A stretch of 64,000 nucleotides of DNA, from NCBI GenBank assembly GCA_002269645.1, contig NIVC01003775.1, positions 13,429 through 77,428 on the forward strand, given 5' to 3'. The notes under the pieces were generated by a model. It saw only the letters and a program-made list of their open reading frames with translations. It was not told the origin of the DNA and searched no databases. This document shows, in pieces, positions 16,666 through 64,000 of the stretch. Numbering within the stretch: position 1 is the first letter of the stretch; every line of letters starts with the position of its first letter. This DNA is from Macrostomum lignano (Eukaryota). Both the position numbers and the translations under genes were made by a program.

Positions 16666-16752
16666 CTGCAATTACGGAGTGCCAAAATATACAATAAAAG
16701 TTTTCTATAATAAATTTAACCATAATTTAAATAACTAAACTCAAGCACTCAC

Positions 16753-32514: not shown

Positions 32515-32875
32515 ATGGAAGGCCTGGCTGAAGTCAACGGTCACAATGAAGCGACGGAGCTGATGGAGCAGGAGGCTGCAATGGCTGCGGTGGCGGACGC
32601 GGCGGAGACGGAGGACTTAGGCGAGCTGGAGGAGGCCGTGGAGGCGGTTGAGTCCATGTCAAGCAACAGCCGGTACAGCGTGCTGTGCTTCGAGCAGGTG
32701 CAACTGCTTCACGAGTTCATGCAGCGCGAGATCTGCATTCAGGGCCGGGGGCCGTACCCCACTCTGAGGCTGACCCTGCGCGACCTGGTGTCCAGAGTTC
32801 GAGCCCGGATCGAAGCGGACGGTGTGGCTGTGCGAGATGTCCGGTTGAATGGCAGCAGTGCCAGCTTCATCATCG
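32515..32875 (+). CDS. TENT5: TENT5/FAM46 non-canonical poly(A) polymerase, exon 1
   Basis: RYSVLCFEQVQLL...I.IQGRGPYPTL...VRDVRLNGSSAS matches the FAM46 N-terminal NTase region; donor ATC G|gtgagt, phase 1. Confidence 0.93.
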
Positions 32876-36270: not shown

Positions 36271-37676
36271 GCATGAACTCGGCCCAGTCCTACAACGACT
36301 TGGACCTTCTGTTCGGCGTTGACCTCAGCGCTCCGGACACCGTGGACAGAATCAAACTGTCCGTGCTGGACTGTCTTCATTCGTTTCTCCCCAGCGGCTC
36401 CGAGGAAATCCTGAAGCGCCGGCACTGCTCCGGCCCAGCCTGGGGCCGCTCAGACTCCAACATGATGGAGGGCTACGTGAGGAAGCTGGTGCGCATTCAG
36501 AGCACAGACAGCTGGTCGCTGATCAGCCTGGGCTACGCCAACTCCAGCCAGCCCGAGGGCCTCACCGTCGAGTTGAAATTCGTCGACAAGATGCGTCGCA
36601 AGTTCGAGTTCACGGTGGACAGCTTCCAGATCATCCTGGACTCGCTGTGCACCTTCTACAGCGTGAAGTCCGAGGAGCCACCAGCAATCAGCGAGCACTT
36701 CTACCCCACCGTCATTGCCGAATCCGTGAGCGGCAGCTTCGTGGAAGCCTACGGCCACCTCATGAAGAAGGAGATCAGCACGAGAAATCCGGAGGAGATT
36801 CGCGGTGGCGGCCTGCTGAAGTACTGCAAACTGCTGGTGGACGGCTTCCTGCCCGCCCAGGGTGTCGACGTTGTCAATCTGGAGAAGTACATGTGCTCCA
36901 GATTCTTCATCGACTTTCCGGACTTGAAGAAACAGCGCGCCAAGATGGAGTCGTACCTGGCGGCGCACTTTCCATCTGACAGGGACCTGGAGCAGCGGGT
37001 GCACTACCTGCAGATCCTCCACCAGGTTGTGAAGAGCTCAACAGTCTGTCTTATGCAGCAGGAGCGCCGATCCACCCTGTACCTCATCTCCGACATGATC
37101 GGCGAGATTTACATCGACATCGAGGCCAGAAATCACGTGATCGCTTTGGAACCGTTCAACTCCACAGACTGGGTGCTCGACCAGGTGTTCTACGGTACGC
37201 AGTACTTTCCAACCCACCTGACTCCGGTTGGATCGCCGCACGCTGCAGCCGCCGCGGCAGCCGCAGCCGCAGCCGAAGTTGGTGCAGCCGACTACTACGG
37301 CACGCCCGTGTACAGCGACGGCACCGGCCGGTTCTACAGCTGCATCTTGTCAACCAGCCAAGGACATTGTTCCGCCCTCCCGGCCGGTCATTTTCTGTCA
37401 ACCGGAGGCGATCCGAGGCTTCAGCAGCAGCAACAACAACAGGCGATGATGCCGCAGTCGTCATACTTTGCAATGCCGGCGCTGAGCCTGTCAGAGTCGG
37501 TCAGCAGCGGCTGCAGCAGCGGCGGCGGCTCCGAAAGTCAGCAGTCCTCAAATGCCTCCTCCGCGGTGGAGTTCCTCATGGAATTTCCGCAGCCGCAGAA
37601 GCAGGTGCAGATTCAGACACAGCAACAGCAACTGCCAGCCATCACAGTCACTAGCGACAGCGGTAGCAGTGACTGA
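36271..37676 (+). CDS. TENT5: TENT5/FAM46 non-canonical poly(A) polymerase, exon 2
   Basis: Acceptor tcctgcgcag|GC; YNDLDLLF, WSLISL, VELKFVD..RRKFEFTVDSFQIILDSL, TRNPEEIRGGGLLKYC, YMCSRFFIDF, STVCLM..ERR.TL. Spliced product 588 aa. Confidence 0.96.
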
Positions 37677-39925: not shown

Positions 39926-40515
39926 GGGACAGGTACCAGTTAGTTTGAGCTGCGCAGCATAAACGTAACAAGATAATTTTATTACAAAAAATTGAAGTTG
40001 ATGGTTATAAAATTGCCCCTACGGAGGATCGGGAGAGCCGTCAAATATTGGGGCCTGGAGAAACACCTGGGTGTGAACAGGTGGCATAATTAACAAAAAA
40101 ATCAAACCTAATCAGAAATGTAAATGTAATTAAATGTAAAATACGAGCGACTTCAGAATCCAAAATAACGAAGTTAGATCACAGTTTCGAGTCGAGATCG
40201 GTTCAGGTGTTTGTGAGCGGCTTCAGACTCTTCGAATAATTAATTGCAGTGCCGCTGCGCTCTCCGGTTCGACTGGAGCAGGCCGATCGCACAATGTCCC
40301 GGCTGTGAAATCAATTATTTAGACAATATTGAATTCTGGACAATAACAGAATACTTTCAAGCGCAATTCTGGCATTGAAACAGCGGAAGGATGTCCGGTT
40401 GTGGGGTTTCGGACACCCTGGGAAATTATTGGACACTTGGGTGGGGATAAGGGGAGGACGGACAGGGGTATCTGGGGGTATTGGTGAAATGAAAAGTGGA
40501 AAATTGAATTAAGAA

Positions 40516-40845
40516 ATGAGACACCTGGGCGAATAGGGAACACAGGGGAATTGAGACACCTGGGCGAACAGGGAACACAGGGGAATTGAGACACCTGGGC
40601 GAACAGGGAACGCAAGGGAATTGAGACACCTGGGCGAACAGGGAACACAGGGGAATTGAGACACCTGGGCGAACAGGGAACACAGGGGAATTGAGACACC
40701 TGGGCGAATAGGGAACACATGGGAATTGAGACACCTGGGCGAAAAGGGAACACAGGGGAATTGAGACACCTGGGCGAACAGGGAACACAGGGGAATTGAG
40801 ACACCTGGGCGAATAGGGAACGCAGGGGAATTGAGACACCTGGAG
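40516..40845. repeat. 35-bp minisatellite, GGGCGAA subtype
   Basis: GAGACACCTGGGCGAACAGGGAACACAGGGGAATT, about 9 copies. Confidence 0.95.
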
Positions 40846-41375
40846 GAACAGGGATCAAAATTATACACACAGCTAAATATATGCTTTACTAAGATTGCTA
40901 CAAGGTCCGGGCCTTGGTCCGGGCCCTGAGATAATTACGGGATTCCGCAATGGGCGGGGCGGAAGCTGCTCCGTGATAAATGATTTTCAAATCCCTCCCA
41001 AGCGAGACTGCCAGGGCACGGAGGTTCGAGTCTGAATGCCCCTCATTTCCTGTCGCCCCGCCGCTGAGTAGCAATATTCGGGCTGAGTCTCACTCAAATC
41101 ACCATTTCTAATAATAGCAACGCAAATTGAATTGAAAATCTGCCAAAGCTTCCCCGCGAAACTGCTTTAGCCTTTGGGAAATCATGCTTTGTAGATTATT
41201 TTGCTTTCACTGCGCCTGTTGCTGATTTTGTTTTGAGCAAATTTCTCGATACTGTTCTCTACAGTGTCTAACACATTTCCTCTCCCTTTCCCTACCTCTC
41301 TACTCTCTCTTCCCTCCCTCTACTCTCCCTCTCTCTCTACTCTCTCTGCCCTCCCTCTACTCTCTCTCCCCACCG

Positions 41376-41444
<69 letters not shown>

Positions 41445-41913
41445 CGACTCTACTCTCCCTTTCTCCACCCTCTACTCTCATTCCCTCGATCCCTCTACTA
41501 TCCCTTTCCCCACCCTCCACTATCTCTGTCCACACCCCTCTACTCTCCCTTTCTCCACCCTCTACTCCCCCTCTCCCCACCTCTCTACTCTCTCCCCCAC
41601 CTCTCTACTCTCCCTTTTCACTGTGATTGAACCCAAGCAATCACAGAGAGATCAGTTCCGCTCCCCAGTTCACTCTTGCATTAAATTTCCGGTGCAATCT
41701 GAGACCAAAAGACAAAAGCAAATCCGCTACAAGCCTGCCCCCAAAGCGCAAAATTAATTTTGCTAGTTGAAGCTTGCAGAGCAGTCTAGAAGTGGTGGTC
41801 TGGACTGAGCAAGGAGGCCTGGCACCACCGCAGTACACAATCAGGAAGTGGATCAGGTGAATTCAAACATAAAAGTGAGTATATTTAAGTAGACCTGTCT
41901 ATAGATTTCATAC

Positions 41914-41981
41914 ATAACGACTCTGAAAACGCATCGATAATATTTCGCGAGGCACTGGAGTACGGCAATGAAAATATTCTA
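41914..41981 (-). CDS. Putative orphan membrane protein, post-TM exon
   Basis: tttttaag|T ... TTA T|gtatga; (C)RIFSLPYSSASRNIIDAFSESL; phase-compatible with the TM exon. Confidence 0.4.
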
Positions 41982-42093
41982 CTTAAAAACACGAAAATAT
42001 TATATTGCGTTTACCCATTATTCAACTAACATGCACACTAGTCTACTTATAACTGCCAGTAAGTAGACAGTATAGCATATGAATTGCACTCAC

Positions 42094-42208
42094 CAGATTA
42101 GCACCAATGCAGCGCATGCGGTGGCTACAAACAGAACCACAGCTGCTCCCATCGGGATGGTCCACAGGGCGAGAACTGCCTCACTGTGGGCCTGATTGCT
42201 GGCGGCAC
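42094..42208 (-). CDS. Putative orphan membrane protein, transmembrane exon
   Basis: aagcag|GT ... ATC TG|gtgagt; AASNQAHSEAVLALWTIPMGAAVVLFVATACAALVLI contains a hydrophobic helix of about 23 aa. Confidence 0.6.
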
Positions 42209-42261
42209 CTGCTTGACAGCACGTGGGGGGGGGTTAAACACCTGCGTGGGATGGGAGAACA

Positions 42262-43035
42262 GGGAACACTGGGGGAATTTAGACACCTGGTGGCCAAACA
42301 GGGAACACAAGGGAATTGAGACACCTGGGCAAACAGGGAACACAAGGGAATTGAGACACCTGGGCAAACAGGGAACACAAGGGAATGGAGACACCTGGGC
42401 AAACAGGGAACACAAGGGAATTGAGACACCTGGGCAAACAGGGAACACAGGGGAATGGAGACACCTGGGCAAACAGGGAACACAAGGGAATGGAGACACC
42501 TGGGCAAACAGGGAACACAGGGGAATTGAGACACCTGGGCAAACAGGGAACACAGGGGAATTGAGACACCTGGGCAAACAGGGAACACAAGGGAATTGAG
42601 ACACCTGGGCAAACAGGGAACACAGGGGAATGGAGACACCTGGGCAAACAGGGAACACAGGGGAATCGAGACACCTGGGCAAACTGGCAAACTGAGAACA
42701 CAGGGGAATGGAGACACCTGGGCAAACAGGGAACACATGGGAATTGAGACACCTGGGCAAACAGGGAACACAGGGGAATCGAGACACCTGGGCAACCTGA
42801 GAACACAAGGGAATCGAGACACCTGGGCAAACAGGGAACACAGGGGAATCGAGACACCTGGGCAACCTGAGAACACAAGGGAATTGAGACACCTGGGCAA
42901 ACAGGGAACACAGGGGAATTGAGACACCTGGGCAAACAGGGGAACACAGGGGAATCGAGACACCTGGGCAAACAGGGAACACAGGGGAATCGAGACACCT
43001 GGGCAAACAGGGAACACAAGGGAATCGAGACACCT
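42262..43035. repeat. 35-bp intronic minisatellite, GGGCAAA subtype
   Basis: GAGACACCTGGGCAAACAGGGAACACA(A/G)GGGAAT(T/G/C), about 22 copies. Confidence 0.95.
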
Positions 43036-43063
43036 AGAACAGCTAAAAGATGCAATATCCTAC

Positions 43064-43253
43064 CTTGAGCAGAAGACCTCTGTCCACCAAAATATTGCTC
43101 CATCACATGAGCTTTGATTTTTGTTCGAACAGTAGAAATAATTTTCCCAGTGGAAAGAAAGTCAGCTTCGAGCGTGCCAGGCAGTTTCCCGCTCTCATAA
43201 CGCAGCCCCACAGTGCACAGATGCAGTACAAGAATTACGGAATTAGTTGCAGC
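43064..43253 (-). CDS. Putative orphan membrane protein, exon
   Basis: tttgtccctcctatag|GCT ... CAA G|gtagga; AATNSVILVLHLCTVGLRYESGKLPGTLEADFLSTGKIISTVRTKIKAHVMEQYFGGQRSSAQ. Confidence 0.6.
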
Positions 43254-43296
43254 CTATAGGAGGGACAAACAGAAAATCTTGCCAATCAAAATTCAC

Positions 43297-43412
43297 AAGG
43301 CAGCTGTTCCATAGCTGGGGATTGTGTAGAGTTAGTGAGGATTTCCTTGTCTGCTTGCATAGCATATTGAGCGATGTGCAGAGAATGTCAAGCCTATTCT
43401 TTCGAGGCGTCG
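43297..43412 (-). CDS. Putative orphan membrane protein, exon
   Basis: gtatag|CG ... CTT|gtgaat, followed by a 43-nt intron; TPRKNRLDILCTSLNMLCKQTRKSSLTLHNPQLWNSCL. Confidence 0.5.
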
Positions 43413-43524
43413 CTATACATGTACATGTATATATTAGGAAATGTAAATTGCATTTGAGCAATGGAGCTCTTTCAGATAAGGGTGGTGAATCTATGAAAGG
43501 AGTTGAGAGCGATTATAGTAGACG

Positions 43525-45905
43525 GGGTGAGAGTAAGATTGAGACTGATGGAGGGGTGAGAGTGAGATTGAGACTGATGGAAGGGTGAGAGTGAGATTGA
43601 GACTGATGGAGGGGTGAGAGTGAGATTGAGACTGATGGAGGGGTGAGAGTGAGATTGAGACTGATGGAGGGGTGAGAGTGAGATTGAGACTGGTGGAGGG
43701 GTGAGAGTGAGATTGAGACTGGTAGAGGGGTGAGAGTGAGATTGAGACTGGTGGAGGGGTGAGAGTGAGATTGAGACTGATGGAGGGGCGAGAGTGAGAT
43801 TGAGACTGGTGGAAGGGTGAGAGTGAGATTGAGACTGGTGGAAGGGTGAGAGTGAGATTGAGACTGGTGGAGGGGTGAGAGTGAGATTGAGACTGGTGGA
43901 GGGGTGAGAGTGAGATTGAGACTGATGGAGGGGCGAGAGTGAGATTGAGACTGATGGAGGGGTGAGAGTGAGATTGAGACTGGTGGAGGGGTGAGAGTGA
44001 GATTGAGACTGATGGAGGGGTGAGAGTGAGATTGAGACTGATGGAGGGGTGAGAGTGAGATTGAGACTGATGGAGGGGTGAGAGTGAGATTGAGACTGGT
44101 GGAGGGGTGAGAGTGAGATTGAGACTGGTGGAGGGGTGAGAGTGAGATTGAGACTGATGGAGGGGCGAGAGTGAGATTGAGACTGGTGGAAGGGTGAGAG
44201 TGAGATTGAGACTGGTGGAAGGGTGAGAGTGAGATTGAGACTGGTGGAGGGGTGAGAGTGAGATTGAGACTGGTGGAGGGGTGAGAGTGAGATTGAGACT
44301 GATGGAGGGGCGAGAGTGAGATTGAGACTGATGGAGGGGTGAGAGTGAGATTGAGACTGGTGGAGGGGTGAGAGTGAGATTGAGACTGATGGAGGGGTGA
44401 GAGTGAGATTGAGACTGGTGGAGGGGTGAGAGTAAGATTGAGACTGATGGAGGGGTGAGAGTGAGATTGAGACTGATGGAGGGGTGAGAGTGAGATTGAG
44501 ACTGATGGAGGGGTGAGAGTGAGATTGAGACTGGTGGAGGGGTGAGAGTGAGATTGAGACTGGTGGAGGGGTGAGAGTGAGATTGAGACTGATGGAGGGG
44601 CGAGAGTGAGATTGAGACTGGTGGAAGGGTGAGAGTGAGATTGAGACTGGTGGAAGGGTGAGAGTGAGATTGAGACTGGTGGAGGGGTGAGAGTGAGATT
44701 GAGACTGGTGGAGGGGTGAGAGTGAGATTGAGACTGATGGAGGGGCGAGAGTGAGATTGAGACTGATGGAGGGGTGAGAGTGAGATTGAGACTGGTGGAG
44801 GGGTGAGAGTGAGATTGAGACTGATGGAGGGGTGAGAGTGAGATTGAGACTGGTGGAGGGGTGAGAGTAAGATTGAGACTGATGGAGGGGTGAGAGTGAG
44901 ATTGAGACTGATGGAGGGGTGAGAGTGAGATTGAGACTGATGGAGGGGTGAGAGTGAGATTGAGACTGGTGGAGGGGTGAGAGTGAGATTGAGACTGATA
45001 GAGGGGTGAGAGTGAGATTGAGACTGATGGAGGGGTGAGAGTGAGATTGAGACTGGTGGAGGGGTGAGAGTGAGATTGAGACTGGTGGAAGGGTGAGAGT
45101 GAGATTGAGACTGGTGGAGGGGTGAGAGTGAGATTGAGACTGGTGGAGGGGTGAGAGTGAGATTGAGACTGGTGGAGGGGTGAGAGTGAGATTGAGACTG
45201 GTGGAGGGGTGAGAGTGAGATTGAGACTGGTGGAGGGGTGAGAGTGAGATTGAGACTGGTGGAGGGGTGAGAGTGAGATTGAGACTGGTGGAGGGGTGAG
45301 AGTGAGATTGAGACTGGTGGAGGGGTGAGAGTGAGATTGAGACTGGTGGAGGGGTGAGAGTGAGATTGAGACTGGTGGAAGGGTGAGAGTGAGATTGAGA
45401 CTGGTGGAGGGGTGAGAGTGAGATTGAGACTGGTGGAGGGGTGAGAGTGAGATTGAGACTGGTGGAGGGGTGAGAGTGAGATTGAGACTGGTGGAGGGGT
45501 GAGAGTGAGATTGAGACTGGTGGAGGGGTGAGAGTGAGATTGAGACTGGTGGAGGGGTGAGAGTGAGATTGAGACTGATAGAGGGGCGAGAGTGAGATTG
45601 AGACTGATGGAGGGGCGAGAGTGAGATTGAGTCAAAGAAAAAGGTGAGATTAAGTCGGTGATAAAAGGTGAGATTGAGTCGATGATAAAAGGTGAGATTG
45701 AGGGGATCATAAAAGGTGAGATTGAGGGGATCATAAAAGGTGAGATTGAGTGGATCATAAAAGGTAAGATTGAGTGGATCATAAAAGGTGAGATTGATTG
45801 GATCATGAAAGGTGAGATTGAGTGGATCATAAAAGGTGAGATTGAGTGGATCATAAAAAGTGAGATTGAGTGGATCATAAAAAGTGAGATTGAGTGGATC
45901 ATAAA
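43525..45905. repeat. 29-bp minisatellite (43525-45630) grading into a 24-bp variant (45631-45905)
   Basis: GAGAGTGAGATTGAGACTG(G/A)TGGAGGGGT, about 72 copies, then AAAAGGTGAGATTGAGTGGATCAT. Confidence 0.95.
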
Positions 45906-45943
45906 AGGTGTAGCAGTGAAGCTGCAGGTTAAAAAGAGATTAC

Positions 45944-46016
45944 ATAAGAGGCGGCTCCTTGAAGAGTGACTGACACAAGTCGTTTCCCAGGAGACGATGG
46001 TGAGACGTGAGTGCAT
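45944..46016 (-). CDS. Putative orphan membrane protein, tentative first exon
   Basis: ATG at 46016; donor TTA T|gtaatc, phase 1, compatible with the exon starting at 43412. Weak support. Confidence 0.25.
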
Positions 46017-49673: not shown

Positions 49674-52019
49674 TCAATCTGTCGGGTGCCTTCCGCGTGC
49701 GCTGGCAGCGATGACCTCTTTCAGGTTGTCCAGGCTCTTCCGTCGGGTTACTTGTGTTCTGGTCAGCAACACCTTGCTGTGACCTCTCCTGAGGCTCGCT
49801 AGTTTCAACGGGAATCCTTGGTTTTGTTGCTCCAGATGATATCGGCTGTGTTTTCCGTCTTCCAATTGTACGCCCACAATTTTCTTACCTTCTCTAGCAA
49901 CGATTTCACCGGGCTTCCATTTCTCGGTTTCGTTCCTGTAGGTCTTTACCCACACCGGTTCTTTGGCCAAGGTCAACGTTGCCGTCCGAAGCAGATGTCC
50001 TCGCATTAACTCTGCAGGTGCCCTTCTTGTCGTGGAGTGACGGGAGTTCCTGTACTGTAGAAGGAAGCGGTCGACACTGGTTTGTAGATCGTCTTCGCCT
50101 CCTGATGCCGCCACATGGTTCTTCAGGTCTCTCACAAACCTTTCGGCAAGGCCGTTTGATCGTGGGTGGTACGGAGGCGTGAGCACGTGTCTGCATCCGT
50201 TTCCTTTGAGCCAGCCCTCCATCTCCACTGAAGTGAATTGTGGACCATTGTCAGTAACCAATGTTGCGGGAACACCTTCTTGCGAGAACGTTCTTTGGAA
50301 ACGTCGGATAGTCTCTGCCGATGTGGTTGACTGCGTAACATGTACTTCTGCCCATTTGCTGTAGGCATCGACTATTACGAGCAGGTACTTGTTGCCCTTA
50401 AACGGTCCAGCGTAGTCTGCGTGCACACGGCACCACTTTTCGCTTTCCTCTGGCCAAGATGCCCATTGGATTGATGCTCCATGGTCTTGATTTGTCTGGC
50501 AAGCGACGCATTGCTTGGTATGCCTAGTGACATCAGCGTCTATTCCTGGCCACCATACGCATTGTCTGGCAATGGATTTCATCTTGTCCGCGCCTATGTG
50601 GCCGTCGTGCAATAGTTGAAGAACTCTTTGTCGCTCCTCCTCCGGGATCAGCAGGCGTATTCCTCTGTAAAGAAGACCGTTCTCGATCACCAGTTCGTCA
50701 CGAGTTCGAGCGTATGTTGGTAGCTCCTTGATTCCTTGGGCTGTCCAGCCATGCTTGACGAGCGCAAACAGCCGTCGCATCTCCTGATCAAGCATTGAAG
50801 TGCGCCTAAGCCGCTGCTTGTCAACTGGTATATCGAGTAGACTGTCCTGAATCGAGTTGACGTCGAATTGCTCGCTCTCCGCGGCACTATTATTCAATCG
50901 AGATAGGGCATCGGCGACAGGGATCTCCTCGGAACGCTTACACTCGATGACGTAATCATACTCCATGAGTGTGATCGCCCATCGCTGTAGCCTAGCAGCA
51001 GCAACCATAGACAAGGCCTTTCCAGGGTTGAACAAAAATTTCAGTGGGTGATGGTCCGTCCTGAGCACGAACTTGCGTCCTAGCAGATATTTGTGGAGGC
51101 GTTTAACCGCCCAGACTATGGCTAGCGCCTCTCTTTCGATCTGTGCATAATTTCTCTCAGCCTGTGTCAACGTCTTGGAGATAAATAGAACAGGACCGGA
51201 CGACTGCTCCAACACGGCTCCCAGTCCCACCGGTGATGCATCAGTCGTAAGTATAATATTGTCAGCTGGATCGAATGACTTTAGAAGTCCGGCGTTGAGC
51301 AATCTTTCCTTGATTGTGTTAAAGGCCTTCTGTTCTTGCCTTCCCCAGGTCCATCGCACACCTGACCTGGTTAGATTGGTCAATGACTCTTTCAACGTAG
51401 CCAAGTTAGGAATGCATCGTCCATAGAAATCGACCATTCCCAAGAACGCCTGTAGTTGTTTGAGGTCGCTTGGCTCTTTCAATCCGGCAATGGCTTCCAC
51501 TTTCTCCTTTAGAGGGCGAATTCCATCAGCACTGATCTCGTAGCCCAAAAATCGTATTGACGACTTGTTTAGTACAGACTTGTCAGCATTTATGCAAAGT
51601 CCATTGTTTTCCAGGATCTTCATTACAGTGTTGAGCCTTTTGTCATGATCAGTCTGACCTTGGCCCCAGATGAGGATATCGTCCTGGTAGGATATCACGC
51701 CGTCGAGGTTTAGCAGGAGTTTATCCATATGTGACTGGAAGATAGCGGGTGCTTGTTTTACCCCAAAAGCCAGTGCGGTTGGACGAAACAGGCCAAAGGG
51801 TGTGCTCCAAGTTTGCATCTGACTTGTCTCGGCGTCGACTGATACCTGCAAGTATGCGTTTGTGAGATCTAGCGTGGAGAATTTCCGGGCTCGACCCAAT
51901 CTGGACATCACTTCATCAATTGATGGCGTCGTCGACACCATGTCTTCCAAGACTGGGTTCAGTGTTATCTTATAGTCGCCACAAATCCTGATACTACCAG
52001 ATTGCTTTCTGACACACAC
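49674..52019 (-). CDS. pol (RT-RNaseH-integrase) of Mag-like element
   Basis: Uninterrupted 781-aa ORF: RICGDYK, LDLTNAYLQ, YQDDI, TDASPVGLG, EREALA, TDHHPL, LHDGHIG..CVAC, ADYAGP, TDNGPQF, AERF. Confidence 0.92.
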   Translation of the reverse strand: MCVRKQSGSIRICGDYKITLNPVLEDMVSTTPSIDEVMSRLGRARKFSTLDLTNAYLQVSVDAETSQMQTWSTPFGLFRPTALAFGVKQAPAIFQSHMDKLLLNLDGVISYQDDILIWGQGQTDHDKRLNTVMKILENNGLCINADKSVLNKSSIRFLGYEISADGIRPLKEKVEAIAGLKEPSDLKQLQAFLGMVDFYGRCIPNLATLKESLTNLTRSGVRWTWGRQEQKAFNTIKERLLNAGLLKSFDPADNIILTTDASPVGLGAVLEQSSGPVLFISKTLTQAERNYAQIEREALAIVWAVKRLHKYLLGRKFVLRTDHHPLKFLFNPGKALSMVAAARLQRWAITLMEYDYVIECKRSEEIPVADALSRLNNSAAESEQFDVNSIQDSLLDIPVDKQRLRRTSMLDQEMRRLFALVKHGWTAQGIKELPTYARTRDELVIENGLLYRGIRLLIPEEERQRVLQLLHDGHIGADKMKSIARQCVWWPGIDADVTRHTKQCVACQTNQDHGASIQWASWPEESEKWCRVHADYAGPFKGNKYLLVIVDAYSKWAEVHVTQSTTSAETIRRFQRTFSQEGVPATLVTDNGPQFTSVEMEGWLKGNGCRHVLTPPYHPRSNGLAERFVRDLKNHVAASGGEDDLQTSVDRFLLQYRNSRHSTTRRAPAELMRGHLLRTATLTLAKEPVWVKTYRNETEKWKPGEIVAREGKKIVGVQLEDGKHSRYHLEQQNQGFPLKLASLRRGHSKVLLTRTQVTRRKSLDNLKEVIAASARGRHPTD

Positions 52020-52039
52020 TATAGGCGTGGCCCATTCGC

Positions 52040-53444
52040 TTAATTCTCTAACTGTCCTTCAGATTCCATTCTTCGTAGCTCATTCTTTACGTCTTCTTGA
52101 ATACCATAGGGAATCGGTCTTGGCTTGCAGAAAACAGGTTTTGCGCCTGGCCTGATCGATGGTGACACCTTCACGGTGTCGACTGGAGACATGCGACTTG
52201 ATTGCCGTTCTTCAGTAGTGTCAGCATTACCACCTTGGGTTATGGCGACATAAAGCTCCGGCTCCAGCTCTGCAATCCAGTCCAAACCATATATGGGCTC
52301 CACATCTCTGTGGTCAACGACAAACAATGGCAGGTTTGCTACTGCGCCGCCACGCTCTACTCTGACAGTAACTTCTAAAACACGCACCGGATCTCCTTGG
52401 TATGCTGTAAATCGTCGGGCTGTCGGTCTTAAATTGGATTTCAACGGAAGGCCTTGATACACCTTTAGCGATACAAATGATGAGACGGATCCCGTGTCCA
52501 TAATCATATGAAGATTGGCCCCATTGACCAGCAGAAGCCTTGTTATCCTGCGCCTGCTGGGCTCCTCACAGCTGCCATTTACGGAGAAGATGCTGTCCTG
52601 TGCTCCTACAGGTCCTGAAGAATCTTTCTGCGGTTCGATCGCTCTCACCTTGACAGTCTGTCTTGACCCTTGAGCAGGTCTTGATGGATTAGACTTACAC
52701 ACAGCTTTCAGGTGGCCAGTCTTTCCGCAATTCAGGCAGGTCTTAGAACGGTGCTGGCAGACGTCCTTGCGGTGTCCATCCTTGCCACAGCAGAAACATT
52801 TTGTTTGGTCGCGATGGCTTTTTGATTCCACTTGCCGTAACCGGCTGGCTGCCACGCTTTGCGATCGTTCTGTCGAGTCTCTGGCAAACGCGGTCGATCC
52901 GTCCTATTGACCGATAAGATTTCGCTGCTGCTCATCTGTTTTTCGCCTCGCCTGCGCTTGCGCTTGCCATGGACGTCACCCTCTCCCAGGTGAGGTCTGC
53001 AAGTTTTTCAGTTAGCAGTTTCCTCACAATGTCTTTGTTAGACAGACCAAACACAAACTGGTCGCGCAACCTGTTGTTTAGGTCCGTGAATTCACAGTTG
53101 TCCGCGGCTTGTCGAAGTCTCCTAGCATAGGCCGACGTGTCTTCTCCGCTTTCTTGCTTCATGTGGTGGAAAGCGTATCTATAGGCCAGTCCCGACTTCG
53201 ATGCTTTCGTTTCGTTTGTTAGTAGCGTCTTCAGCTGATCGAAGGTCTTTTCCTCTGGTTTTGCTGGCAGTACAGCGTCAGCCAAAAAGTTGAACGCCTT
53301 CTTCCCCAGTTGTGCTATAAACGCGTACTTCAGCACGTCGTCGTTCCACTTGTTAACTTTGGCTATAGCCTCGAATCGCTGTAGCCATCTGCTGACCTCG
53401 GCAGGCACGTCTGTCTCCAGGGGTTCGATTGGAATCGTCGCCAT
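52040..53444 (-). pseudogene. gag-protease of Mag-like element, with apparent frameshifts
   Basis: MATIPIEPL...WLQRFE...LRDQFVFGL, then CFCCGKDGH / CLNCGKTGHL and MDTGS. The frame changes near 52940, ~52830 and ~52035. Confidence 0.85.
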
Positions 53445-53455
53445 CCTCGTCACCA
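53441..53455 (-). other. Primer-binding site, tRNA-Ser(GCT)-type
   Basis: TGGTGACGAGGATGG versus expected TGGCGACGAGGATGG (14 of 15, with a G-T wobble). Confidence 0.7.
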
Positions 53456-53456
53456 G

Positions 53457-53670
53457 TGTTGATTCTGAAGGCACAGACACTATAACACCAATTTTGATGT
53501 AGCCTATAGCTAACTCGGTAATTTCTTAAGTGCTCCAGTTGAGCAGCTCTCACTATCACTTTTTATTTATTGTGGCCTTAGAACGAGGCACCGCTCATTC
53601 AAGTTGTACTGTAATGCTAGTGGCGGTCATGCCATAGATAAAAGTCTATATCAAATTAATACATCTAACA
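53457..53670 (-). repeat. 5' LTR of Mag-like element
   Basis: 214 bp, near-identical to 49383-49595. Confidence 0.95.
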
Positions 53671-58444: not shown

Positions 58445-58554
58445 CTGGGGGGGATTGTACTAATAAGTATAACTGCATTGTACCCATTGCCTACCTGCCT
58501 ACTAATGGTATTTACTAGTCTATCTACTACCCATTATACCCCTAATAGAACTAT

Positions 58555-59130
58555 AATTATCCCTAATCTACCCATGATATCTCTAATCTACCCATGATAT
58601 CTCTAATCTACCCATGATATCTCTAATCTATCCATGATATCTCTAATCTACCCATGATATCTCTAATCTACCCATGACATCCCTAATCTACCCATTATAT
58701 ACCTAATCTACCCATTATATACCTAATCTACTCATTATATCCCTAATCTACCCACTATATCCCCAATCTACCTATTATATCCCTAAGCTACACACTATAT
58801 ACCAAATCTACTCATTATATCCCTAAGCTACCCACTATATACCAAATCTACCCATTATATACCTAATCTACCCATTATATACCTAATCTACCCATTATAT
58901 ACCTAATCTACCCATTATATACCTAATCTTCCCATTATATCCCTAATCTACCCATTATATCCCTAATCTACCCTTTATATACCTAATCTACCCATCATAT
59001 CCCTAAGCTACCCATTATATCCCTAAGCTACCCATTATATCCCTAAGCTACCCATTATATCCCTAAGCTACCCATTATATACCTAATCTACCCATTATAT
59101 ACCAAATCTACCCATTATATACCTAATCTA
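58555..59130. repeat. 20-bp intronic minisatellite
   Basis: CCCATTATAT(A/C)CCTAA(T/G)CTA. Confidence 0.95.
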
Positions 59131-59147
59131 CCCAGCCCACAACCAAC

Positions 59148-59594
59148 CTGCAGAGCGGGAGTGAGCAAGGCTTGAGCCTGCCTATACAAGCACAGCTCAG
59201 TGTCCAGCCCCAGCCGGTTAGCCTTGGCCAGAGTGACCAGGTTCTGCAGCAACAGGTGCCTCTGCATGGGTTCAACGCTGTTCAAGTGATACGTGGCCAG
59301 CTCGAACACAAAGGCCAACACTCTGCTTCCACCAGTGTTGCCAGCCTTAGTGAAGGCCTCCGTGAGTACAGATTTAGGCTGCAAATTCAAATCGTGATGC
59401 ATGAGCACAGTGATCCTGGCGTACGTGTCCAGCACCACGGGACTGTCGGCATGGGTTGACAGCAGGTTGTACAGCAGACTGTTGATAGCCAGCAGTGACA
59501 TTGTGGCTAACTGGCGTAGGCTGGAGTAAGATGGAGCAATGGCGTCTGATTGTTTGAGCGCTTCTACCAGCTTGGAGTTGAGCGGGCTGACCAC
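59148..59594 (-). CDS. MED23: Mediator subunit 23, exon
   Basis: cgcag|GTG ... CAG|gttggt; VLDTYARITV, VFELATYHLNSVEPMQRHLLL correspond to LVETYSRLLV, LLEMFSYRMHHIQPHYRVQLL. Confidence 0.9.
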
Positions 59595-59789
59595 CTGCGG
59601 GTCATAGGGTCATGGTCTATGATTGTGCGATCATACACTTTTCGGAACTTTGGATGAATGATTTTGGAATCATGCGATATTAACATAGGGTCATGGAATA
59701 ACGGAGATCAGTAAGGGACTTCCAAAAATGCGATTGAGAATGAGAATAGGATCATGTGACCCTGCAGAATATAATTATGGGATCATAAG

Positions 59790-61000
59790 AGAATGTGATC
59801 ATAGTCATAGAGAATGGGATCATAGGGTCATAGAGAATGGAATCATATGGTCATAGAGAATGGAATCATAGGGTCACAGAGAATGGAATCATAGGGTCAT
59901 AGAGAATGGAATCATAGGGTCATAAAGAATGCGATCATAGGGTCATAGAGAATGGGATCATAGGGTCATAGAGAAGGGGATCATAGGGTCATAGAGAATG
60001 GAATCATAGGGTCATAGAGAATGGAATCATAGGGTCATAAAGAATGGGATCATAGGGTCATAGAGAATGGGATCATAGAGTCATAGAGAATGGGATCATA
60101 GTCATAGAGAATGGGATCATAGTCATAGAGAATGGGATCATAGTCATAGAGAATGGGATCATAGTCATAGAGAATGGGATCACATACATAAATATTTAAA
60201 TCATGGGATCATAGAGAATGGGATCATAGGGTCATAGAAAATGGGATCATAGAGTCATAGAGAACGGGATCAGAGTCACAGAGAACGGGATCAGAGTCAT
60301 AGAGAATGGAATCATAGGGTCATAGAGAATGTGATCATAGTCATAGAGAATGGAATCATAGCGTCATAGAGAATGGGATCATAGGGTCATAGAGAATGGA
60401 ATCATAGGGTCATAGGGAAGGGGATCAGAGTCATAGAGAATGGAATCATAGGGTCATAGAGAATGTGATCAGAGTCATAGAGAATGGAATCATAGGGTCA
60501 TAGAGAATGTGATCAGAGTCATAGAGAATGGAATCATAGGGTCATAGAGAATGTGATCAGAGTCATAGAGAATGGAATCATAGGGTCATAGAGAATGTGA
60601 TCAGAGTCATAGAGAATGGAATCATAGGGTCATAGAGAATGTGATCAGAGTCATAGAGAATGGAATCATAGGGTCATAGAGAATGTGATCAGAGTCATAG
60701 AGAATGGAATCATAGGGTCATAGAGAATGTGATCAGAGTCATAGAGAATGGAATCATAGGGTCATAGAGAATGTGATCAGAGTCATAGAGAATGGAATCA
60801 TAGGGTCATAGGGAAGGGGATCAGAGTCATAGATAATGGAATCATAGGGTCATAGAGAATGTGATCAGAGTCATAGAGAATGGAATCATAGGGTCATAGG
60901 GAAGGGGATCAGAGTCATAGAGAATGGAATCATAGGGTCATAGAGAATGGGATCAAAGTCATAGAGAATGGAATCATAGTCATAGGGAATATGATCATAG
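59790..61000. repeat. ~21-23-bp intronic minisatellite with dimeric higher-order units
   Basis: CATAGGGTCATAGAGAATGG(G/A)AT alternating with CAGAGTCATAGAGAATGTGAT. Confidence 0.95.
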
Positions 61001-61057
61001 TCACACGCACGTAATGGGATTAGGGGATCAATGGGAAAACATCCCAGCGCTACAAAC

Positions 61058-61440
61058 CTGAGGCTGACCCAGAGGCGCATAAGCATTATAAACGTAGGCG
61101 AACCAGCGAAACTCTTCGGGATCCAGCGGGACTTGATAGCTGGGAGACTGCGACATCTGCTGGAACTTCTCCATCAGCTCTGACATCATTGGCTGCATCG
61201 GAGGCGGCAGGGCTCGAGGCAGCCGCTCGTTGGGCGCGCTGGACTTCTGGGTGAGGCTGAACCAAACCAGCAGGGTGGTGTCAAAGGCTGGCGCCCCGCC
61301 TGGAAACAGCGCGTCAAGGATGCGCAGGATGGGAGCAAAATCTACGAGGGGATTTTTGTTTTGAGCGCCCAAGAAGTTGAACAGCATCCAAGCGATGTGC
61401 GGCGCCGAACGGCTGAGCGAATCTCGTCGATCTTGCAGGC
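61058..61440 (-). CDS. MED23: Mediator subunit 23, exon
   Basis: aaccag|GC ... CAG|gtttgt; HIAWMLFNFLG..NKNPLVDFAPILRILDALFP corresponds to HLMWVLLQFISG..QKNALADFLPVMKLFDLLYP. Confidence 0.9.
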
Positions 61441-61594
61441 CTGGTTTTGGTTGAAGGGAATTGAATATTAGCGAAATGTTTGCATTGCTACTCAGTCAGT
61501 AGAGTAGTCCAAGTATGTTGCAATATCTATCTGAGCCAGGTGAGTGTCTCAGTTGACGATATGCGAGATTAGGGAAAAATAGCTGGCATACTAA

Positions 61595-61897
61595 GGGATC
61601 TGGGAGGCTGACCCAGCAACTGAGGATCTGGGAGGCTGGTACAGCAACTGAGGATCTGGGAGACTGGTACAGCAACTGAGGATCTGGGAGGCTGACCCAG
61701 CAACTGAGGATCTGGGAGGCTGGTACAGCAACTGAGGATCTGGGAGGCTGGCCCAGCAACTGAGGATCTGGGAGGCTGACCCAGCAACTGAGGATCTGGG
61801 AGGCTGACCCAGCAACTGAGGATCTGGGAGGCTGGCCCAGCAACTGAGGATCTGGGAGGCTGACCCAGCAACTGAGGATCTGGGAGGCTGACCCAGA
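61595..61897. repeat. 28-bp intronic minisatellite
   Basis: CAGCAACTGAGGATCTGGGAGGCTG(ACC/GTA/GCC). Confidence 0.95.
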
Positions 61898-61912
61898 AAC
61901 TGAGCTCAATAC

Positions 61913-62377
61913 CTTCCAAAACTCCAAGGCACATCTCGGGAAAGCGCACGAGATGCAGCCGACAAAGATGGATGCTGTACAGTCCCAGATGACGCCACAT
62001 CATGTCTGCCCAAGCCATCTCGCTATCGGATTCGCAGGCCTCGGTCTCGTCGGCAGTCCACAGAATGGTGTCAATCAAGCATCGCTCCAGAAACAGGCAC
62101 CTGGATATCTTGCTAGCCCTTGGTGCCGTGTGCAGTGACAGAAGACTCAACAACAGGTCCATGCTGCCCTGCTGCGTGAGCACAGCCCTGATGAGGCTGG
62201 TATGCGGTCTCTGCAAGCACCTGGCATAGGGCAGGGGGCCCTTCAAATCCAGGGCGCCAGTCGAGGCCAGCAGATTCACGGGCACATTGGTGACGCTGCT
62301 GGGCTGCGGATGCTGCAGAATGGCCGGCGGCATGCAGTAGTTGCCAACACCGGCTATGGGAACGATTTGACGGATCA
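61913..62377 (-). CDS. MED23: Mediator subunit 23, exon
   Basis: ccccgcag|TG ... GAA G|gtattg; LKGPLPY...PHTSLIRAVLTQ..S.D, RCLFLE, MWRHL, FPEM correspond to LKGLLPY...PQTALLRYVLEQ..S.D, RCPVLE, LWQHL, FPHM. Confidence 0.9.
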
Positions 62378-62447
62378 CTGCGGGGCGGAGCAGGCGGGTG
62401 AGTCATCTGCTACTCTGATCCAGCAGGAATGATTAGCAGCACCTTAC

Positions 62448-62517
62448 CTCTGTGCGAGAACATGTTGGCAACGTTTTTGAAGCTATTGCGAAATGTTTCC
62501 AGTTTGGTCTTTAAAAT
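62448..62517 (-). CDS. MED23: Mediator subunit 23, most 5' exon found in the window (gene continues beyond)
   Basis: tttcctccctcag|ATT ... AGA G|gtaagg; KLETFRNSFKNVANMFS corresponds to KLVSDFVDTFRPTARINS; followed by a 70-nt intron. Confidence 0.75.
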
Positions 62518-62679
62518 CTGAGGGAGGAAAGTTATTGAGGATCTGCTGCTGGACTGATTGTGAATTTATCGATCATTCTGTATAAAATATAGACACCCGT
62601 ACGACTCTACTACGACTAGGACTACTACTACAACTTTTCTACTATTAGTCTACTACTGAAATACAGTGCCCAGTTGCCT

Positions 62680-62948
62680 GTGAACAGGGTCTGAGCAGAC
62701 AGTAGTCTGTAAACAGGGTCTGAGCAGACAGCAGTCTGTAAACAGGGTCTGAGCAGACAGCAGTCTGTAAACAGGGTCTGAGCAGACAGCAGTCTGTAAA
62801 CAGGGTCTGAGCAGACAGCAGTCTGTAAACAGGGTCTGAGCAGACAGCAGTCTGTGAACAGGGTCTGAGCAGACAGCAGTCTGTGAACAGGGTCTGAGCA
62901 GACAGCAGTCTGTGAACAGGGTCTGAGCAGACAGCAGTCAGTGAACAG
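62680..62948. repeat. 29-bp intronic minisatellite
   Basis: AACAGGGTCTGAGCAGACAGCAGTCTGT(A/G), about 9 copies. Confidence 0.95.
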
Positions 62949-63395
62949 ACGCCGCCAACTGCGACTCGTGACTTGTCTGGCTACATTAAAACAGTCTACC
63001 AGTACGACTCTACTAAGACTACGACTACTACGTCTGTGACCAGATGCCATGAACTGCTACTTGTGGCCGGTCTGGCCTACTCAAACTAATTTAATCTCGT
63101 ATGTGCATCAAATTATTTACACTTCGTTAATTAGTCAGAGTTCTCAGTGCTCTATAACAATTATTTATTTTTCTAAATAACTTATTTGTAGTATTTTTCA
63201 AGCTGGTTAGTCACATTTCTAAGCTGTAATGCCTTAACCAGTCAGAGTGCTTTAATTCCCTCTTTGTATTAGCTATATGTACGTGCATTTTTACACAACA
63301 CTGCTCAGTGCACCCAGCCAAAGCTGGTACATAAATAATAATGTTATGAGGAAATAACTTCACTACCAAAATAATTGCTACTTTATATACCCTCA

Positions 63396-63443
63396 AAATA
63401 AACCCTGACGAAGGCCATGATTTGGCCGAAATATCGGTTATTT
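63396..63443 (+). ncRNA. Minimal type I hammerhead ribozyme motif (Penelope-type)
   Basis: AACC-CTGACGA-A-GGCCA-tgatt-TGGCC-GAAA-TAT-C-GGTT: intact core CUGANGA and GAAA, 5-bp helix II, palindromic ATAT helix III, UC cleavage site at 63435, helix I AACC/GGTT extendable by TAAA/ATTT. Confidence 0.75.
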
Positions 63444-63805
63444 CAAAGTTTGACACCTGAAAACTTCAATCTTCCGTGTGCGTGGTTGCGGTTTCAGACT
63501 GTCTTATACTCGTAGATATCTCTATTTATCTATTTATCGATCTTTCGATCTATATATCCATCTATCTTTCTATCTATCTATGGATCAAATATACTTCATT
63601 AACTACTAAACGGCAGTGCCCAGTTGTCTGTGTCCAGGGACTGAGCAGACGGTGATCTGTGTCCAGACGCCGCCCTGATACTTGTGGCTTGCCAGGATAA
63701 ACAATTAATTACTGCATATGCATCAGTATGTAATTATTTACCCTTCTTTAACCAGTTTAAGTAAGGTCGTAGTGCTCTGTAACAATTTAATTTACTTTAA
63801 AAACA

Positions 63806-64000
63806 TTAGACACCAGTGAATGCGGCGGAAAGATCCTCCCAACGCTGCGCATTGAGGACAGAATTAACCTACGACCGACACCCACGTTCCTTGGCCTTCG
63901 CCTAGACGACCAACTGACTTCGCCAACCATATAGAGGCAGTGCGCAAAAGATGGCCACCAGGCGGCGTTGTCTGCAAAGTCTCGTTGGCAAATCCCAGGA
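63806..64000 (+). mobile_element. Non-LTR retrotransposon (LINE) RT C-terminal fragment, running off the window
   Basis: With two 1-nt frame corrections it reads PTPTFLGLRLDDQLT-FANHIEAVRK-MATRRRCLQSLVGK, the typical LINE FLG..LD..L.F..HI motif. Confidence 0.7.

What the first reader, a model, noticed from the sequence alone, without database searches (positions are those of the whole stretch)
63396..63443. Intact minimal hammerhead ribozyme in a MED23 intron, antisense to the gene
Seen: helix I (AAAT-A-AACC / GGTT-ATTT), core CUGACGA, one extra A, helix II GGCCA/UGGCC, GAAA, palindromic AUAU and a UC cleavage triplet. Established: Penelope-like retroelements carry such minimal type I hammerheads with a palindromic helix III that cleave as dimers, and an extra nucleotide between A9 and G10.1 is tolerated in a natural viroid hammerhead. 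No Penelope ORF or second copy is visible, so this may be a non-autonomous retrozyme-like or pLTR relic. It would not cut MED23 pre-mRNA but would cut antisense RNA.
Basis: partly seen in the sequence, partly recalled or inferred. Interest (0 to 1): 0.7.

Follow-up and report, generated by a model that had tools for sequence, protein, structure and literature searches.

The report
Penelope-type minimal hammerhead ribozyme relic
A complete 48-base minimal hammerhead ribozyme of the kind carried by Penelope-like retrotransposons lies, as a lone copy and antisense, in an intron of the flatworm Macrostomum lignano's MED23 gene; it is a real transposon-derived motif of a known kind and most likely has no function for the host.

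Summary
Window 63396-63443 (+) carries helix I, CUGACGA, one extra A, a 5-bp helix II, GAAA, the palindrome AUAU and C17. Chance is very unlikely: 80 Mb of composition-matched random sequence gave no match to a generic minimal-hammerhead descriptor. The extra A, the G10.1-C11.1 pair and the palindromic 15.2/16.2 positions are the published hallmarks of Penelope-like element (PLE) minimal hammerheads.

A covariance model built only from 33 metagenomic hammerheads of this subtype hits the window once, here, at 46.9 bits (E = 4.5e-11; next hit 13.1 bits). The closest sequence relatives among those hammerheads sit beside RT + GIY-YIG (PLE) reading frames on the same strand.

The window is Macrostomum lignano contig NIVC01003775.1. 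MED23 is on the minus strand and the motif lies in a 5' intron, antisense.

No PLE reading frame and no second hammerhead is in the window or in 73 kb of other M. lignano DNA. The contig ends 557 bases downstream, inside a decayed LINE-like fragment. A diverged partial second copy of the flanking unit is present, so a tandem partner beyond the contig end cannot be excluded.

Verdict: a new member of a known kind, probably an inert solitary relic. Interest is low to moderate.

The parts
63396..63443 (+). Complete minimal type I hammerhead ribozyme motif (PLE subtype)
   Evidence: Direct reading; descriptor scan; covariance model R1 hit at 63396-63444, 46.9 bits, E = 4.5e-11, model positions 1-48 of 48
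63396..63404 (+). Helix I 5' strand: AAAU, bulged A63400, AACC
   Evidence: Pairs with 63436-63443
63405..63411 (+). Catalytic core C3 U4 G5 A6 C7 G8 A9 (CUGACGA)
63412..63412 (+). Extra A between A9 and G10.1, a hallmark of PLE minimal hammerheads
   Evidence: PMC4209133
63413..63427 (+). Helix II: GGCCA / UGGCC with loop UGAUU; G10.1-C11.1 closes the stem. An AUG lies at 63417-63419.
63428..63435 (+). G12 A13 A14, the helix III palindrome A15.1 U15.2 A16.2 U16.1, and C17. The predicted cleavage is between 63435 and 63436.
   Evidence: The palindrome gives 4 A-U pairs only in a dimer.
63436..63443 (+). Helix I 3' strand: GGUU AUUU
63185..63531 (+). Segment X: AT-rich, non-coding, 347 bp, holding the hammerhead 88 nt from its 3' end. 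It is the candidate 3'-terminal (pLTR-like) fragment of a PLE or of a non-autonomous derivative. Its boundaries are inferred from the A/B repeat.
   Evidence: Alignment of the flanks; no Pfam hit in the plus-strand frames; no PLE similarity by tblastn
62564..63184 (+). Direct-repeat unit A, with an internally expanded 29-bp minisatellite at 62613-63006
63532..63808 (+). Direct-repeat unit B: a diverged second copy of unit A, 80% identical over ungapped columns. Both units start with ATTTATCGATC.
63507..63585 (.). (TATC/TCTA)n-like microsatellite spanning the X/B junction
   Evidence: PLEs have a microsatellite insertion bias (PMC8557442).
63813..64000 (+). Decayed, 5'-truncated LINE-like RT C-terminal fragment, running into the contig end
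   Evidence: Six-frame reading PTFLGLRLDDQLT / ANHIEAVRKR / KMATRRRCLQSLVGKS with two frameshifts. The assignment is by recalled pattern; Pfam found nothing. The window end is the contig end.
62450..62519 (-). First visible MED23 exon (…NVANMFSHR), AG acceptor at 62518-62519. The hammerhead lies in the intron upstream of it.
   Evidence: Direct reading; P0124 starts MFSHRVIRQIV
61905..62378 (-). MED23 exon (Pfam Med23 profile positions 224-359)

Best explanation
The motif is a genuine hammerhead ribozyme of the minimal, dimer-dependent subtype that Penelope-like retroelements (PLEs) carry near their 3' ends, in their pseudo-LTRs. It arrived in this 5' intron of Macrostomum lignano MED23 by retrotransposition of a heavily 5'-truncated PLE copy, or of a short non-autonomous PLE derivative, in the orientation opposite to the gene.

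Shown: the sequence has every conserved core base and the subtype's three hallmarks, and it is statistically and structurally indistinguishable from PLE-linked hammerheads found elsewhere.

Inferred: in an active element, two copies in one tandem transcript (or in two transcripts) pair through the AUAU palindrome to build helix III. Each active site then cuts after C17, probably helped by the element's own protein, and so trims unit-length RNA from read-through transcripts.

Here only one copy is visible and no PLE protein gene is nearby. The locus is therefore most likely a catalytically silent relic. It cannot touch MED23 pre-mRNA, which carries the complement, and could act only on a plus-strand (antisense) transcript that met a partner copy.
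For: - Motif anatomy is complete.
- Chance is very unlikely: 0 hits in 80 Mb of random sequence.
- A pattern that fixed only the core and helix II found at least 120 metagenome loci. In these the unenforced features are enriched: 15.2/16.2 are self-complementary in 85 of 120 (25% expected), and helix I has 3 or more pairs in 51 of 120. Helix I also shows several pair types across families.
- The closest sequence relatives (L072 and L091, 81% over 43 nt) belong to a hammerhead family whose members L072 and L081 are flanked on the same strand by reading frames with RVT_1 plus a C-terminal GIY-YIG domain.
- Model R1, built without the window, gives 46.9 bits and E = 4.5e-11 here. The next window hit scores 13.1 bits, and the training members score 43-67 bits.
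- The hammerhead lies near the 3' end of segment X, next to a microsatellite. This fits the 3'-terminal hammerhead position, the 5' truncation and the microsatellite target bias described for PLEs (PMC8557442).
Against: - No PLE reading frame is in the window.
- No other copy of the motif or of its flanks is in the window or in 73 kb of other M. lignano DNA. Membership of a multi-copy family in this genome is therefore not shown.
- I found no report of PLEs or hammerheads in M. lignano.
- Helix II has 5 bp, shorter than the 6-8 bp typical of the Schistosoma and Drosophila PLE families.
- The metagenome set was fetched with a pattern derived from this motif, so the core and helix II agreement with R1 is partly built in.
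- Nearest-neighbour energies do not favour the dimer: -19.4 kcal/mol against -23.8 for two monomers. In a 160-nt context another hairpin (CCGA/UCGG) competes with the hammerhead fold.
Confidence: 0.8

Rival explanations
1. The locus is a tandem, short non-autonomous element (a non-LTR retrozyme in the PLE-derived sense). Copy 1 would be 62564-63531 (unit A plus X with the hammerhead). Copy 2 would start at 63532 (unit B), is interrupted by a LINE insertion, and would carry its own hammerhead beyond the contig end. The two hammerheads could dimerise in one plus-strand transcript and release a linear or circular RNA of about 0.6-1 kb.
For: Units A and B are homologous, and both begin with ATTTATCGATC directly after the preceding sequence. 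The hammerhead sits 88 nt before the A+X / B junction. Retrozyme consensus lengths of 51-972 bp and relatedness to PLE pLTRs are reported (bioRxiv 10.64898/2026.07.22.740005). Of 100 metagenome loci searched, 11 carry a second hammerhead, in tandem or inverted. The contig ends in a repeat 557 bases downstream.
Against: A and B are only about 80% identical, with large indels, so any tandem is old or the two copies are not sisters. No second hammerhead can be seen. The unit is not found elsewhere in 137 kb of M. lignano DNA. A and B could equally be a local intron duplication into which X inserted.
Confidence: 0.2
2. It is a chance match to the hammerhead consensus in AT-rich intron DNA.
For: Minimal hammerheads are short, Rfam does not recognise this one, and it is a single copy in the DNA available.
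Against: There were 0 hits in 80 Mb of random sequence. I estimate about 0.03 chance occurrences of a motif with these features per whole genome (and my own calculation). Three features not required for a bare core match are all present. R1 gives E = 4.5e-11.
Confidence: 0.01
3. It is a host-retained intronic ribozyme with a regulatory role, comparable in idea to the conserved amniote intronic hammerheads HH9 and HH10, acting on an antisense transcript of the MED23 locus.
For: The core is fully intact, although the surrounding repeat units have diverged by about 20%. If the hammerhead is as old as they are, that hints at constraint.
Against: It is antisense to the only known gene here. Helix III is too weak to act alone. 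No conservation data could be obtained, because the homeologous loci fetched do not reach MED23. The intact state is also expected for a younger insertion.
Confidence: 0.03
4. It is a canonical type I hammerhead of a SINE-like or satellite element (Schistosoma Sm-alpha type, or classical metazoan retrozymes), not the PLE subtype.
For: Flatworms (Schistosoma) have thousands of such elements. Retrozyme-like repeats are reported in platyhelminths (PMC7229834).
Against: There is no closed loop 1 and there are no loop 1-loop 2 contacts. The extra base after A9 and the 4-nt palindrome with no loop 3 are the PLE-subtype pattern (PMC4209133). No tRNA-like or pol III module was found, and no short tandem array.
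Confidence: 0.04

Closest known systems
Minimal hammerheads (min-HHR) of Penelope-like elements (Cervera & de la Pena 2014, PMC4209133; Lunse, Weinberg & Breaker 2017, which I could not read here)
   Same: Type I topology with an open helix I of 4-5 bp. An unpaired nucleotide between A9 and G10.1. The G10.1-C11.1 pair. Helix III reduced to a palindrome (A15.1-U16.1 plus self-complementary 15.2/16.2). Occurs mostly as solitary genomic copies. Known in another flatworm, Schistosoma mansoni.
   Different: Helix II has 5 bp rather than 6-8. No PLE reading frame or pLTR pair is visible at this locus. The host species and lineage (Macrostomorpha) are not reported to carry them, as far as I could find.
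PLE-linked hammerheads in metagenome contigs OFEP01006006.1 (L072) and OFFA01001071.1 (L081), both fetched here
   Same: CUGANGA + A + GGCC...GGCC + GAAAUAU + H17, followed by a 5-bp helix I. L072 is 81% identical to the window motif over 43 nt. In both loci the hammerhead is on the same strand as an adjacent RT + GIY-YIG reading frame.
   Different: Helix II is 6 bp (GGCCGG/CCGGCC), H17 is A, helix I is CACC/GGUG, and N7 is G. There is no flank similarity. The source organisms are unknown.
Metazoan non-LTR retrozymes (Cervera & de la Pena 2020, PMC7229834; Li, Clavereau & Pollet 2026 preprint)
   Same: Non-coding, AT-rich unit with a type I hammerhead that needs a partner copy. A possible tandem arrangement (units A and B). 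Retrozymes are reported to derive from PLE pLTRs.
   Different: Classical retrozyme hammerheads are canonical: closed helix I and loop-loop contacts. They sit in clear arrays of 150-450 bp. Here only one hammerhead and 1.3 diverged units are visible.
Hammerhead with an extra A10 in chrysanthemum chlorotic mottle viroid (De la Pena & Flores 2001, as cited in PMC4209133)
   Same: One additional nucleotide between A9 and G10.1 is compatible with catalysis.
   Different: That is a type III viroid ribozyme with a stable helix III, unrelated in origin.
Amniote intronic hammerheads HH9 and HH10 (Rfam RF02275, RF02277)
   Same: Located in an intron of a protein-coding gene.
   Different: Those are in the sense orientation, act as single copies with full helices, and are conserved across species. 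This one is antisense, minimal and not recognised by those models.

Membership tests
Hammerhead ribozyme (catalytic motif) | Conserved core C3 U4 G5 A6 N7 G8 A9 / G12 A13 A14 / A15.1-U16.1 / H17 | tested here: met
   63405-63411 CUGACGA; 63428-63430 GAA; A63431 and U63434; C63435
Hammerhead ribozyme (catalytic motif) | Three helices around the core | tested here: inconclusive
   Helix I (4 + 4 bp) and helix II (5 bp) form in the minimum-energy fold. Helix III exists only as a 4-nt palindrome that needs a second copy. The modelled dimer is 4.4 kcal/mol less stable than two monomers.
Hammerhead ribozyme (catalytic motif) | Site-specific self-cleavage after H17 | not testable with these tools
   Needs in vitro transcription or RNA end mapping
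PLE minimal hammerhead (min-HHR) | Conserved unpaired nucleotide between A9 and G10.1 | tested here: met
   A63412; criterion from PMC4209133
PLE minimal hammerhead (min-HHR) | G10.1-C11.1 closing pair | tested here: met
   G63413-C63427
PLE minimal hammerhead (min-HHR) | Palindromic 15.2-16.2, with no loop 3 or a palindromic one | tested here: met
   U63432-A63433, giving the palindrome AUAU
PLE minimal hammerhead (min-HHR) | Short open helix I (4-5 bp) and long helix II (6-8 bp) | tested here: inconclusive
   Helix I fits (4 bp, with a further 4 after a bulge). Helix II has 5 bp, one short of the quoted range.
PLE minimal hammerhead (min-HHR) | Full-length match to a structure and sequence profile of PLE-linked hammerheads | tested here: met
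   R1 (33 metagenome sequences, window excluded): 46.9 bits, E = 4.5e-11, positions 1-48 of 48. This is within the 43-67 bit range of the training members. Caveat: the training set was fetched with a pattern taken from this motif's core and helix II.
PLE minimal hammerhead (min-HHR) | Lies in the pLTR of an element encoding RT + GIY-YIG | tested here: not met
   No such reading frame is in the window; tblastn with three PLE proteins gives best E = 0.31. The literature says most genomic copies are solitary, so this lowers 'part of an intact PLE', not 'PLE-derived'.
PLE minimal hammerhead (min-HHR) | Member of a multi-copy, covarying family in the same genome | tested here: inconclusive
   No further copy in the window plus 73 kb of other M. 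lignano loci. The rest of the 764-Mb genome could not be reached.
Metazoan non-LTR retrozyme | Head-to-tail tandem units, each with a hammerhead | tested here: inconclusive
   One full unit (62564-63531) and the first 277 bp of a diverged second unit (63532-63808), then a LINE-like fragment and the contig end
Metazoan non-LTR retrozyme | Canonical type I hammerhead with loop 1-loop 2 tertiary contacts | tested here: not met
   Helix I is open, with no loop 1
Rfam hammerhead families (RF00163, RF00008, RF02275-RF02277) | Score at or above the gathering threshold | tested here: not met
   No hit even at E<=10. Three clear phage hammerheads with an extra base after A9 also fail, so the test is insensitive to this class.

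The most novel reading that the evidence does not exclude
The locus is one end of a still-functional tandem pair of a short, PLE-derived, non-autonomous element in M. lignano. The second hammerhead would lie just beyond the contig end. Plus-strand transcription through both would yield self-cleaved, possibly circular, RNA antisense to the MED23 intron. That would be the first ribozyme-bearing mobile element described in a free-living regenerating flatworm model.
Probability: 0.1. Interest if true: 0.4.

Novelty: new member of a known kind. Interest (0 to 1): 0.25.

Why it matters
The finding adds a free-living macrostomid flatworm to the list of animals that carry Penelope-type minimal hammerheads. 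It also gives a concrete seed (model R1, and the 48-mer) for cataloguing these elements in a laboratory regeneration model. That model has transgenesis and RNA-seq resources, so dimer-dependent or protein-assisted cleavage and circular RNA formation could be tested in vivo.

For annotation it is a reminder that Rfam's hammerhead models miss this whole subtype. For MED23 itself it most likely means nothing.

Tried and rejected
- Rfam at the gathering threshold and at E<=10 gave no hammerhead. A control showed that the test is insensitive to this class.
- Reaching DNA beyond 64000 failed: the window ends at the contig end.
- Reaching the homeologous MED23 introns failed. A MED23 exon query found nothing, although the later hit P0124 contains that exon. 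P0124 has no contig on record. The TENT5 homeologue loci L003 and L004 stop about 8 kb short of MED23.
- An attempt to fetch more M. lignano DNA through the window's Gypsy pol reading frame found no gene on record.
- Searching for copies of 62530-63830 in the window and in L001-L004 found none.
- An exact-helix-I pattern in the metagenomes found no match.
- BLAST of the flanks against all fetched metagenome loci matched only the hammerhead itself.
- A tRNA or SINE-like module near the motif was not found.
- The idea that the hammerhead belongs to the downstream LINE-like fragment was rejected. That fragment is a 5'-truncated RT C-terminus that starts about 370 nt after the motif.
- Literature searches for hammerheads or Penelope elements in Macrostomum found nothing relevant.
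- Lunse et al. 2017 is not held in the library.

Full report
**Observation.** The 48 bases at 63396-63443 (+) read AAAUAAACC CUGACGA A GGCCA UGAUU UGGCC GAA AUAU C GGUUAUUU.
- Helix I is AACC/GGUU, extended by AAAU/AUUU after a bulged A.
- The C3-A9 core has N7 = C.
- One extra A precedes a 5-bp helix II closed by G10.1-C11.1.
- G12 A13 A14 follow, then a four-base palindrome that holds A15.1 and U16.1, then C17.
- The predicted scissile bond is 63435/63436.

The isolated 48-mer adopts helices I and II as its minimum-energy fold (-12.5 kcal/mol, z = -2.4).

**Is it more than chance?** A descriptor for generic minimal hammerheads required:
- helix I of at least 4 bp;
- CUGANGA;
- 0 or 1 extra base;
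- helix II of at least 4 bp;
- GAAA;
- a 2-6 nt palindrome ending in U;
- H17.

It finds this site and nothing else on either strand of the window. It found nothing in 80 million positions of first-order Markov sequence with the window's composition. My analytic estimate is about 3e-9 per position for that descriptor and about 2e-11 once the observed extras are required. That is roughly 4e-4 per window and 0.03 per genome. Chance is therefore very unlikely.

Rfam reports no hammerhead at the gathering threshold or at E<=10. Three clear phage hammerheads that I met later also have an extra base after A9, with a long helix III and a compensatory change in helix I between contigs. Rfam misses them in the same way, so the Rfam negative carries no weight.

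**Where this is.** The TENT5/FAM46 reading frame at 36273-37676 is 100% identical to Macrostomum lignano PAA49850.1. Its contig NIVC01003775.1 (GCA_002269645.1) is 77,428 bp. The coordinates place the window at 13429-77428, so the window ends where the contig ends.

MED23 is on the minus strand.
- Pfam Med23 matches three exons in N-to-C order from high to low coordinates.
- A UniRef M. lignano MED23 (P0124) aligns at 98-100% to eight exons between 62378 and 47525.
- P0124 begins MFSHR, which is encoded by a small exon at 62450-62519. That exon opens with an AG acceptor and is in frame from its first base.
- The first 223 positions of the Med23 profile are not matched by any exon in the window.

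The hammerhead therefore lies in a 5' intron, antisense. The intron status is inferred, because the upstream exons must lie beyond the contig end.

**What kind of hammerhead?** Cervera and de la Pena (PMC4209133) defined the minimal hammerheads of Penelope-like elements. They listed features that emerged without being built into their search:
- the G10.1-C11.1 pair;
- palindromic 15.2-16.2;
- a short helix I without a defined loop 1;
- mostly solitary copies attributed to truncated elements, including thousands in the flatworm Schistosoma mansoni.

The window motif meets all of these. Helix II, at 5 bp, is one pair shorter than the 6-8 bp quoted for the Schistosoma and Drosophila families.

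**Independent test with fetched sequences.** The features the pattern did not enforce are strongly enriched.
- The two N are self-complementary in 85 of 120, against 25% expected.
- Helix I has at least three consecutive pairs in 51 of 120, against a few per cent expected by my estimate.
- Helix I uses different pairs in different families: CACC/GGUG, AACC/GGUU, GCUC/GAGC and GCAC/GUGC.

Three loci carry long reading frames on the same strand as the hammerhead.
- L072: the hammerhead lies about 65 nt before a 1043-codon frame.
- L081: an 826-codon frame ends about 190 nt before the hammerhead.
- L108 has RVT_1.

L072 and L081 belong to a hammerhead family of the form ...GAAAUAUA GGUGA. Its members L072 and L091 are the closest in sequence to the window motif, 81% over 43 nt.

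I aligned 33 distinct metagenome hammerheads and did not include the window. I then built covariance model R1 with helices I and II and with the palindrome modelled as pairs. With filters off, R1 hits the window once, at 63396-63444 (+). The score is 46.9 bits, E = 4.5e-11, over model positions 1-48 of 48. The next hit scores 13.1 bits. Training members score 43-67 bits.

One caveat applies. The pattern came from this motif, so agreement in the core and helix II is partly built in. The pairing of helix I and the palindrome is not.

**Surroundings.** No PLE reading frame is present.
- Reading frames of at least 120 codons are Gypsy-type elements, host genes or translated minisatellites.
- The plus-strand frames of 62521-64000 have no Pfam match.
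- tblastn with the three metagenomic PLE proteins finds nothing in the window or in four M. lignano loci (best E = 0.31).

No second hammerhead was found in the window or in 73 kb from three other M. lignano contigs. None of those loci contains the flanking sequence.

The flanks are not featureless, however. A unit at 62564-63184 (A, swollen by a 29-bp minisatellite) recurs at 63532-63808 (B). The two are 80% identical over ungapped columns, and both start with ATTTATCGATC.

Between them lies X (63185-63531). It is AT-rich and non-coding, with the hammerhead 88 nt from its 3' end, and it abuts a (TATC)n-like microsatellite. After B comes what reads as a decayed, 5'-truncated LINE RT C-terminus that runs to the contig end. 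That assignment is by pattern only; Pfam found nothing for it.

Two readings fit.
- X is a heavily 5'-truncated PLE 3' end that inserted between older repeats. This agrees with the 3'-terminal position of PLE hammerheads, frequent 5' truncation and microsatellite target bias (PMC8557442).
- A+X and B+... are successive copies of a short non-autonomous element, whose second hammerhead would lie beyond the LINE-like fragment and the contig end. Partial tandems are typical of PLEs. Animal retrozymes of 51-972 bp have been traced to PLE pLTRs. Of 100 metagenome loci searched, 11 carry a second hammerhead, tandem or inverted.

**Likely mechanism and activity.** In the double-hammerhead arrangement, the AUAU of two copies pair to form helix III. 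Helix I then forms between the 5' strand of one copy and the 3' strand of the other, and each site cuts after C17.

For this sequence the modelled dimer (-19.4 kcal/mol) is less stable than two monomers (-23.8 kcal/mol). In a 160-nt context a competing CCGA/UCGG hairpin appears.

This agrees with the literature. There is no cleavage by single PLE minimal motifs and weak cleavage by dimers (PMC4209133). The Anolis Poseidon hammerhead cleaved only when the element's protein was added, and its mutation did not affect insertion in vitro (PMC11167929).

A lone copy without a nearby PLE protein gene is therefore most likely silent. It cannot act on MED23 pre-mRNA, which contains only its complement.

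**Verdict.**
- The extra A is diagnostic, not anomalous.
- The absence of a second copy is limited by the contig end, and a partial second unit exists.
- Catalytic activity of the lone copy is doubtful.

This is a new member of a known kind: a PLE-type minimal hammerhead in a species where I found none reported. Interest is low to moderate.

Noticed in passing
L005 2284-2313(-), L006 3799-3828(-), L007 3286-3315(-): Three IMG/VR viral contigs carry a type I hammerhead with an extra U between A9 and G10.1, a 9-10 bp helix III, and a compensatory change in helix I between contigs (CCUAU/AUAGG against CCUAC/GUAGG). Rfam reports no hammerhead for L005 at E<=10.
   Followed up: partly
L008-L127 (metagenome contigs; e.g. 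L010, L022, L023, L068, L092, L094, L096, L105): There are large families of minimal hammerheads with the extra A. One family (CACCACCC CUGAAGAAGGCCAGUGAUGGCCGAAAGCUC GGG) recurs on dozens of contigs of one assembly (JAAUYG01). Of 100 loci searched, 11 hold a second copy, either inverted within about 50-700 bp or in tandem 0.45-1.3 kb apart. The source organisms are unknown.
   Followed up: partly
window 63417-63515 (+): An AUG sits at the helix II / loop II boundary and opens a 32-codon frame (MIWPKYRLFQSLTPENFNLPCAWLRFQTVLYS) that runs to the end of segment X. In the Anolis Poseidon element the ORF start also lies at stem II, with the cut site 26 nt downstream (PMC11167929). This could be the vestige of a PLE ORF start, or a coincidence.
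   Followed up: no
window 49674-53480 (-): A Gypsy-type LTR retrotransposon (gag, protease, RT-RNase H-integrase in three consecutive frames) sits inside a MED23 intron, between the exons at 54038 and 48998. A second, more decayed LTR-element pol lies at 1310-4547 (+).
   Followed up: partly
window 58458-59237, 59758-61111, 61540-61960, 62613-63006, and many others (e.g. 14300-17500, 33800-35300, 40300-46000): Minisatellite arrays with units of 20-44 bp are unusually dense. They fill much of the introns and intergenic DNA and create long spurious reading frames.
   Followed up: no
window 63813-64000 (+): A decayed LINE-like RT C-terminal fragment with two frameshifts runs into the end of the contig. 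It probably explains why the assembly breaks here.
   Followed up: partly
window 32515-37676 (+); L003, L004: The TENT5/FAM46 gene has three near-identical copies on separate contigs (g1-g3). The flanks are 94-97% identical and the minisatellite lengths differ, as expected for the recent genome duplication in M. lignano.
   Followed up: partly
(tool behaviour): The protein search with the 152-aa MED23 exon returned nothing, although P0124, found later with other exons, contains that exon at 98.7% identity. Negative results of that search are not proof of absence.
   Followed up: no
window 63423-63439 (+): The 3' strand of helix II and the 3' strand of helix I can pair with each other (CCGA AAUA UCGG). 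In a 160-nt context this hairpin replaces the hammerhead fold in the minimum-energy structure.
   Followed up: partly
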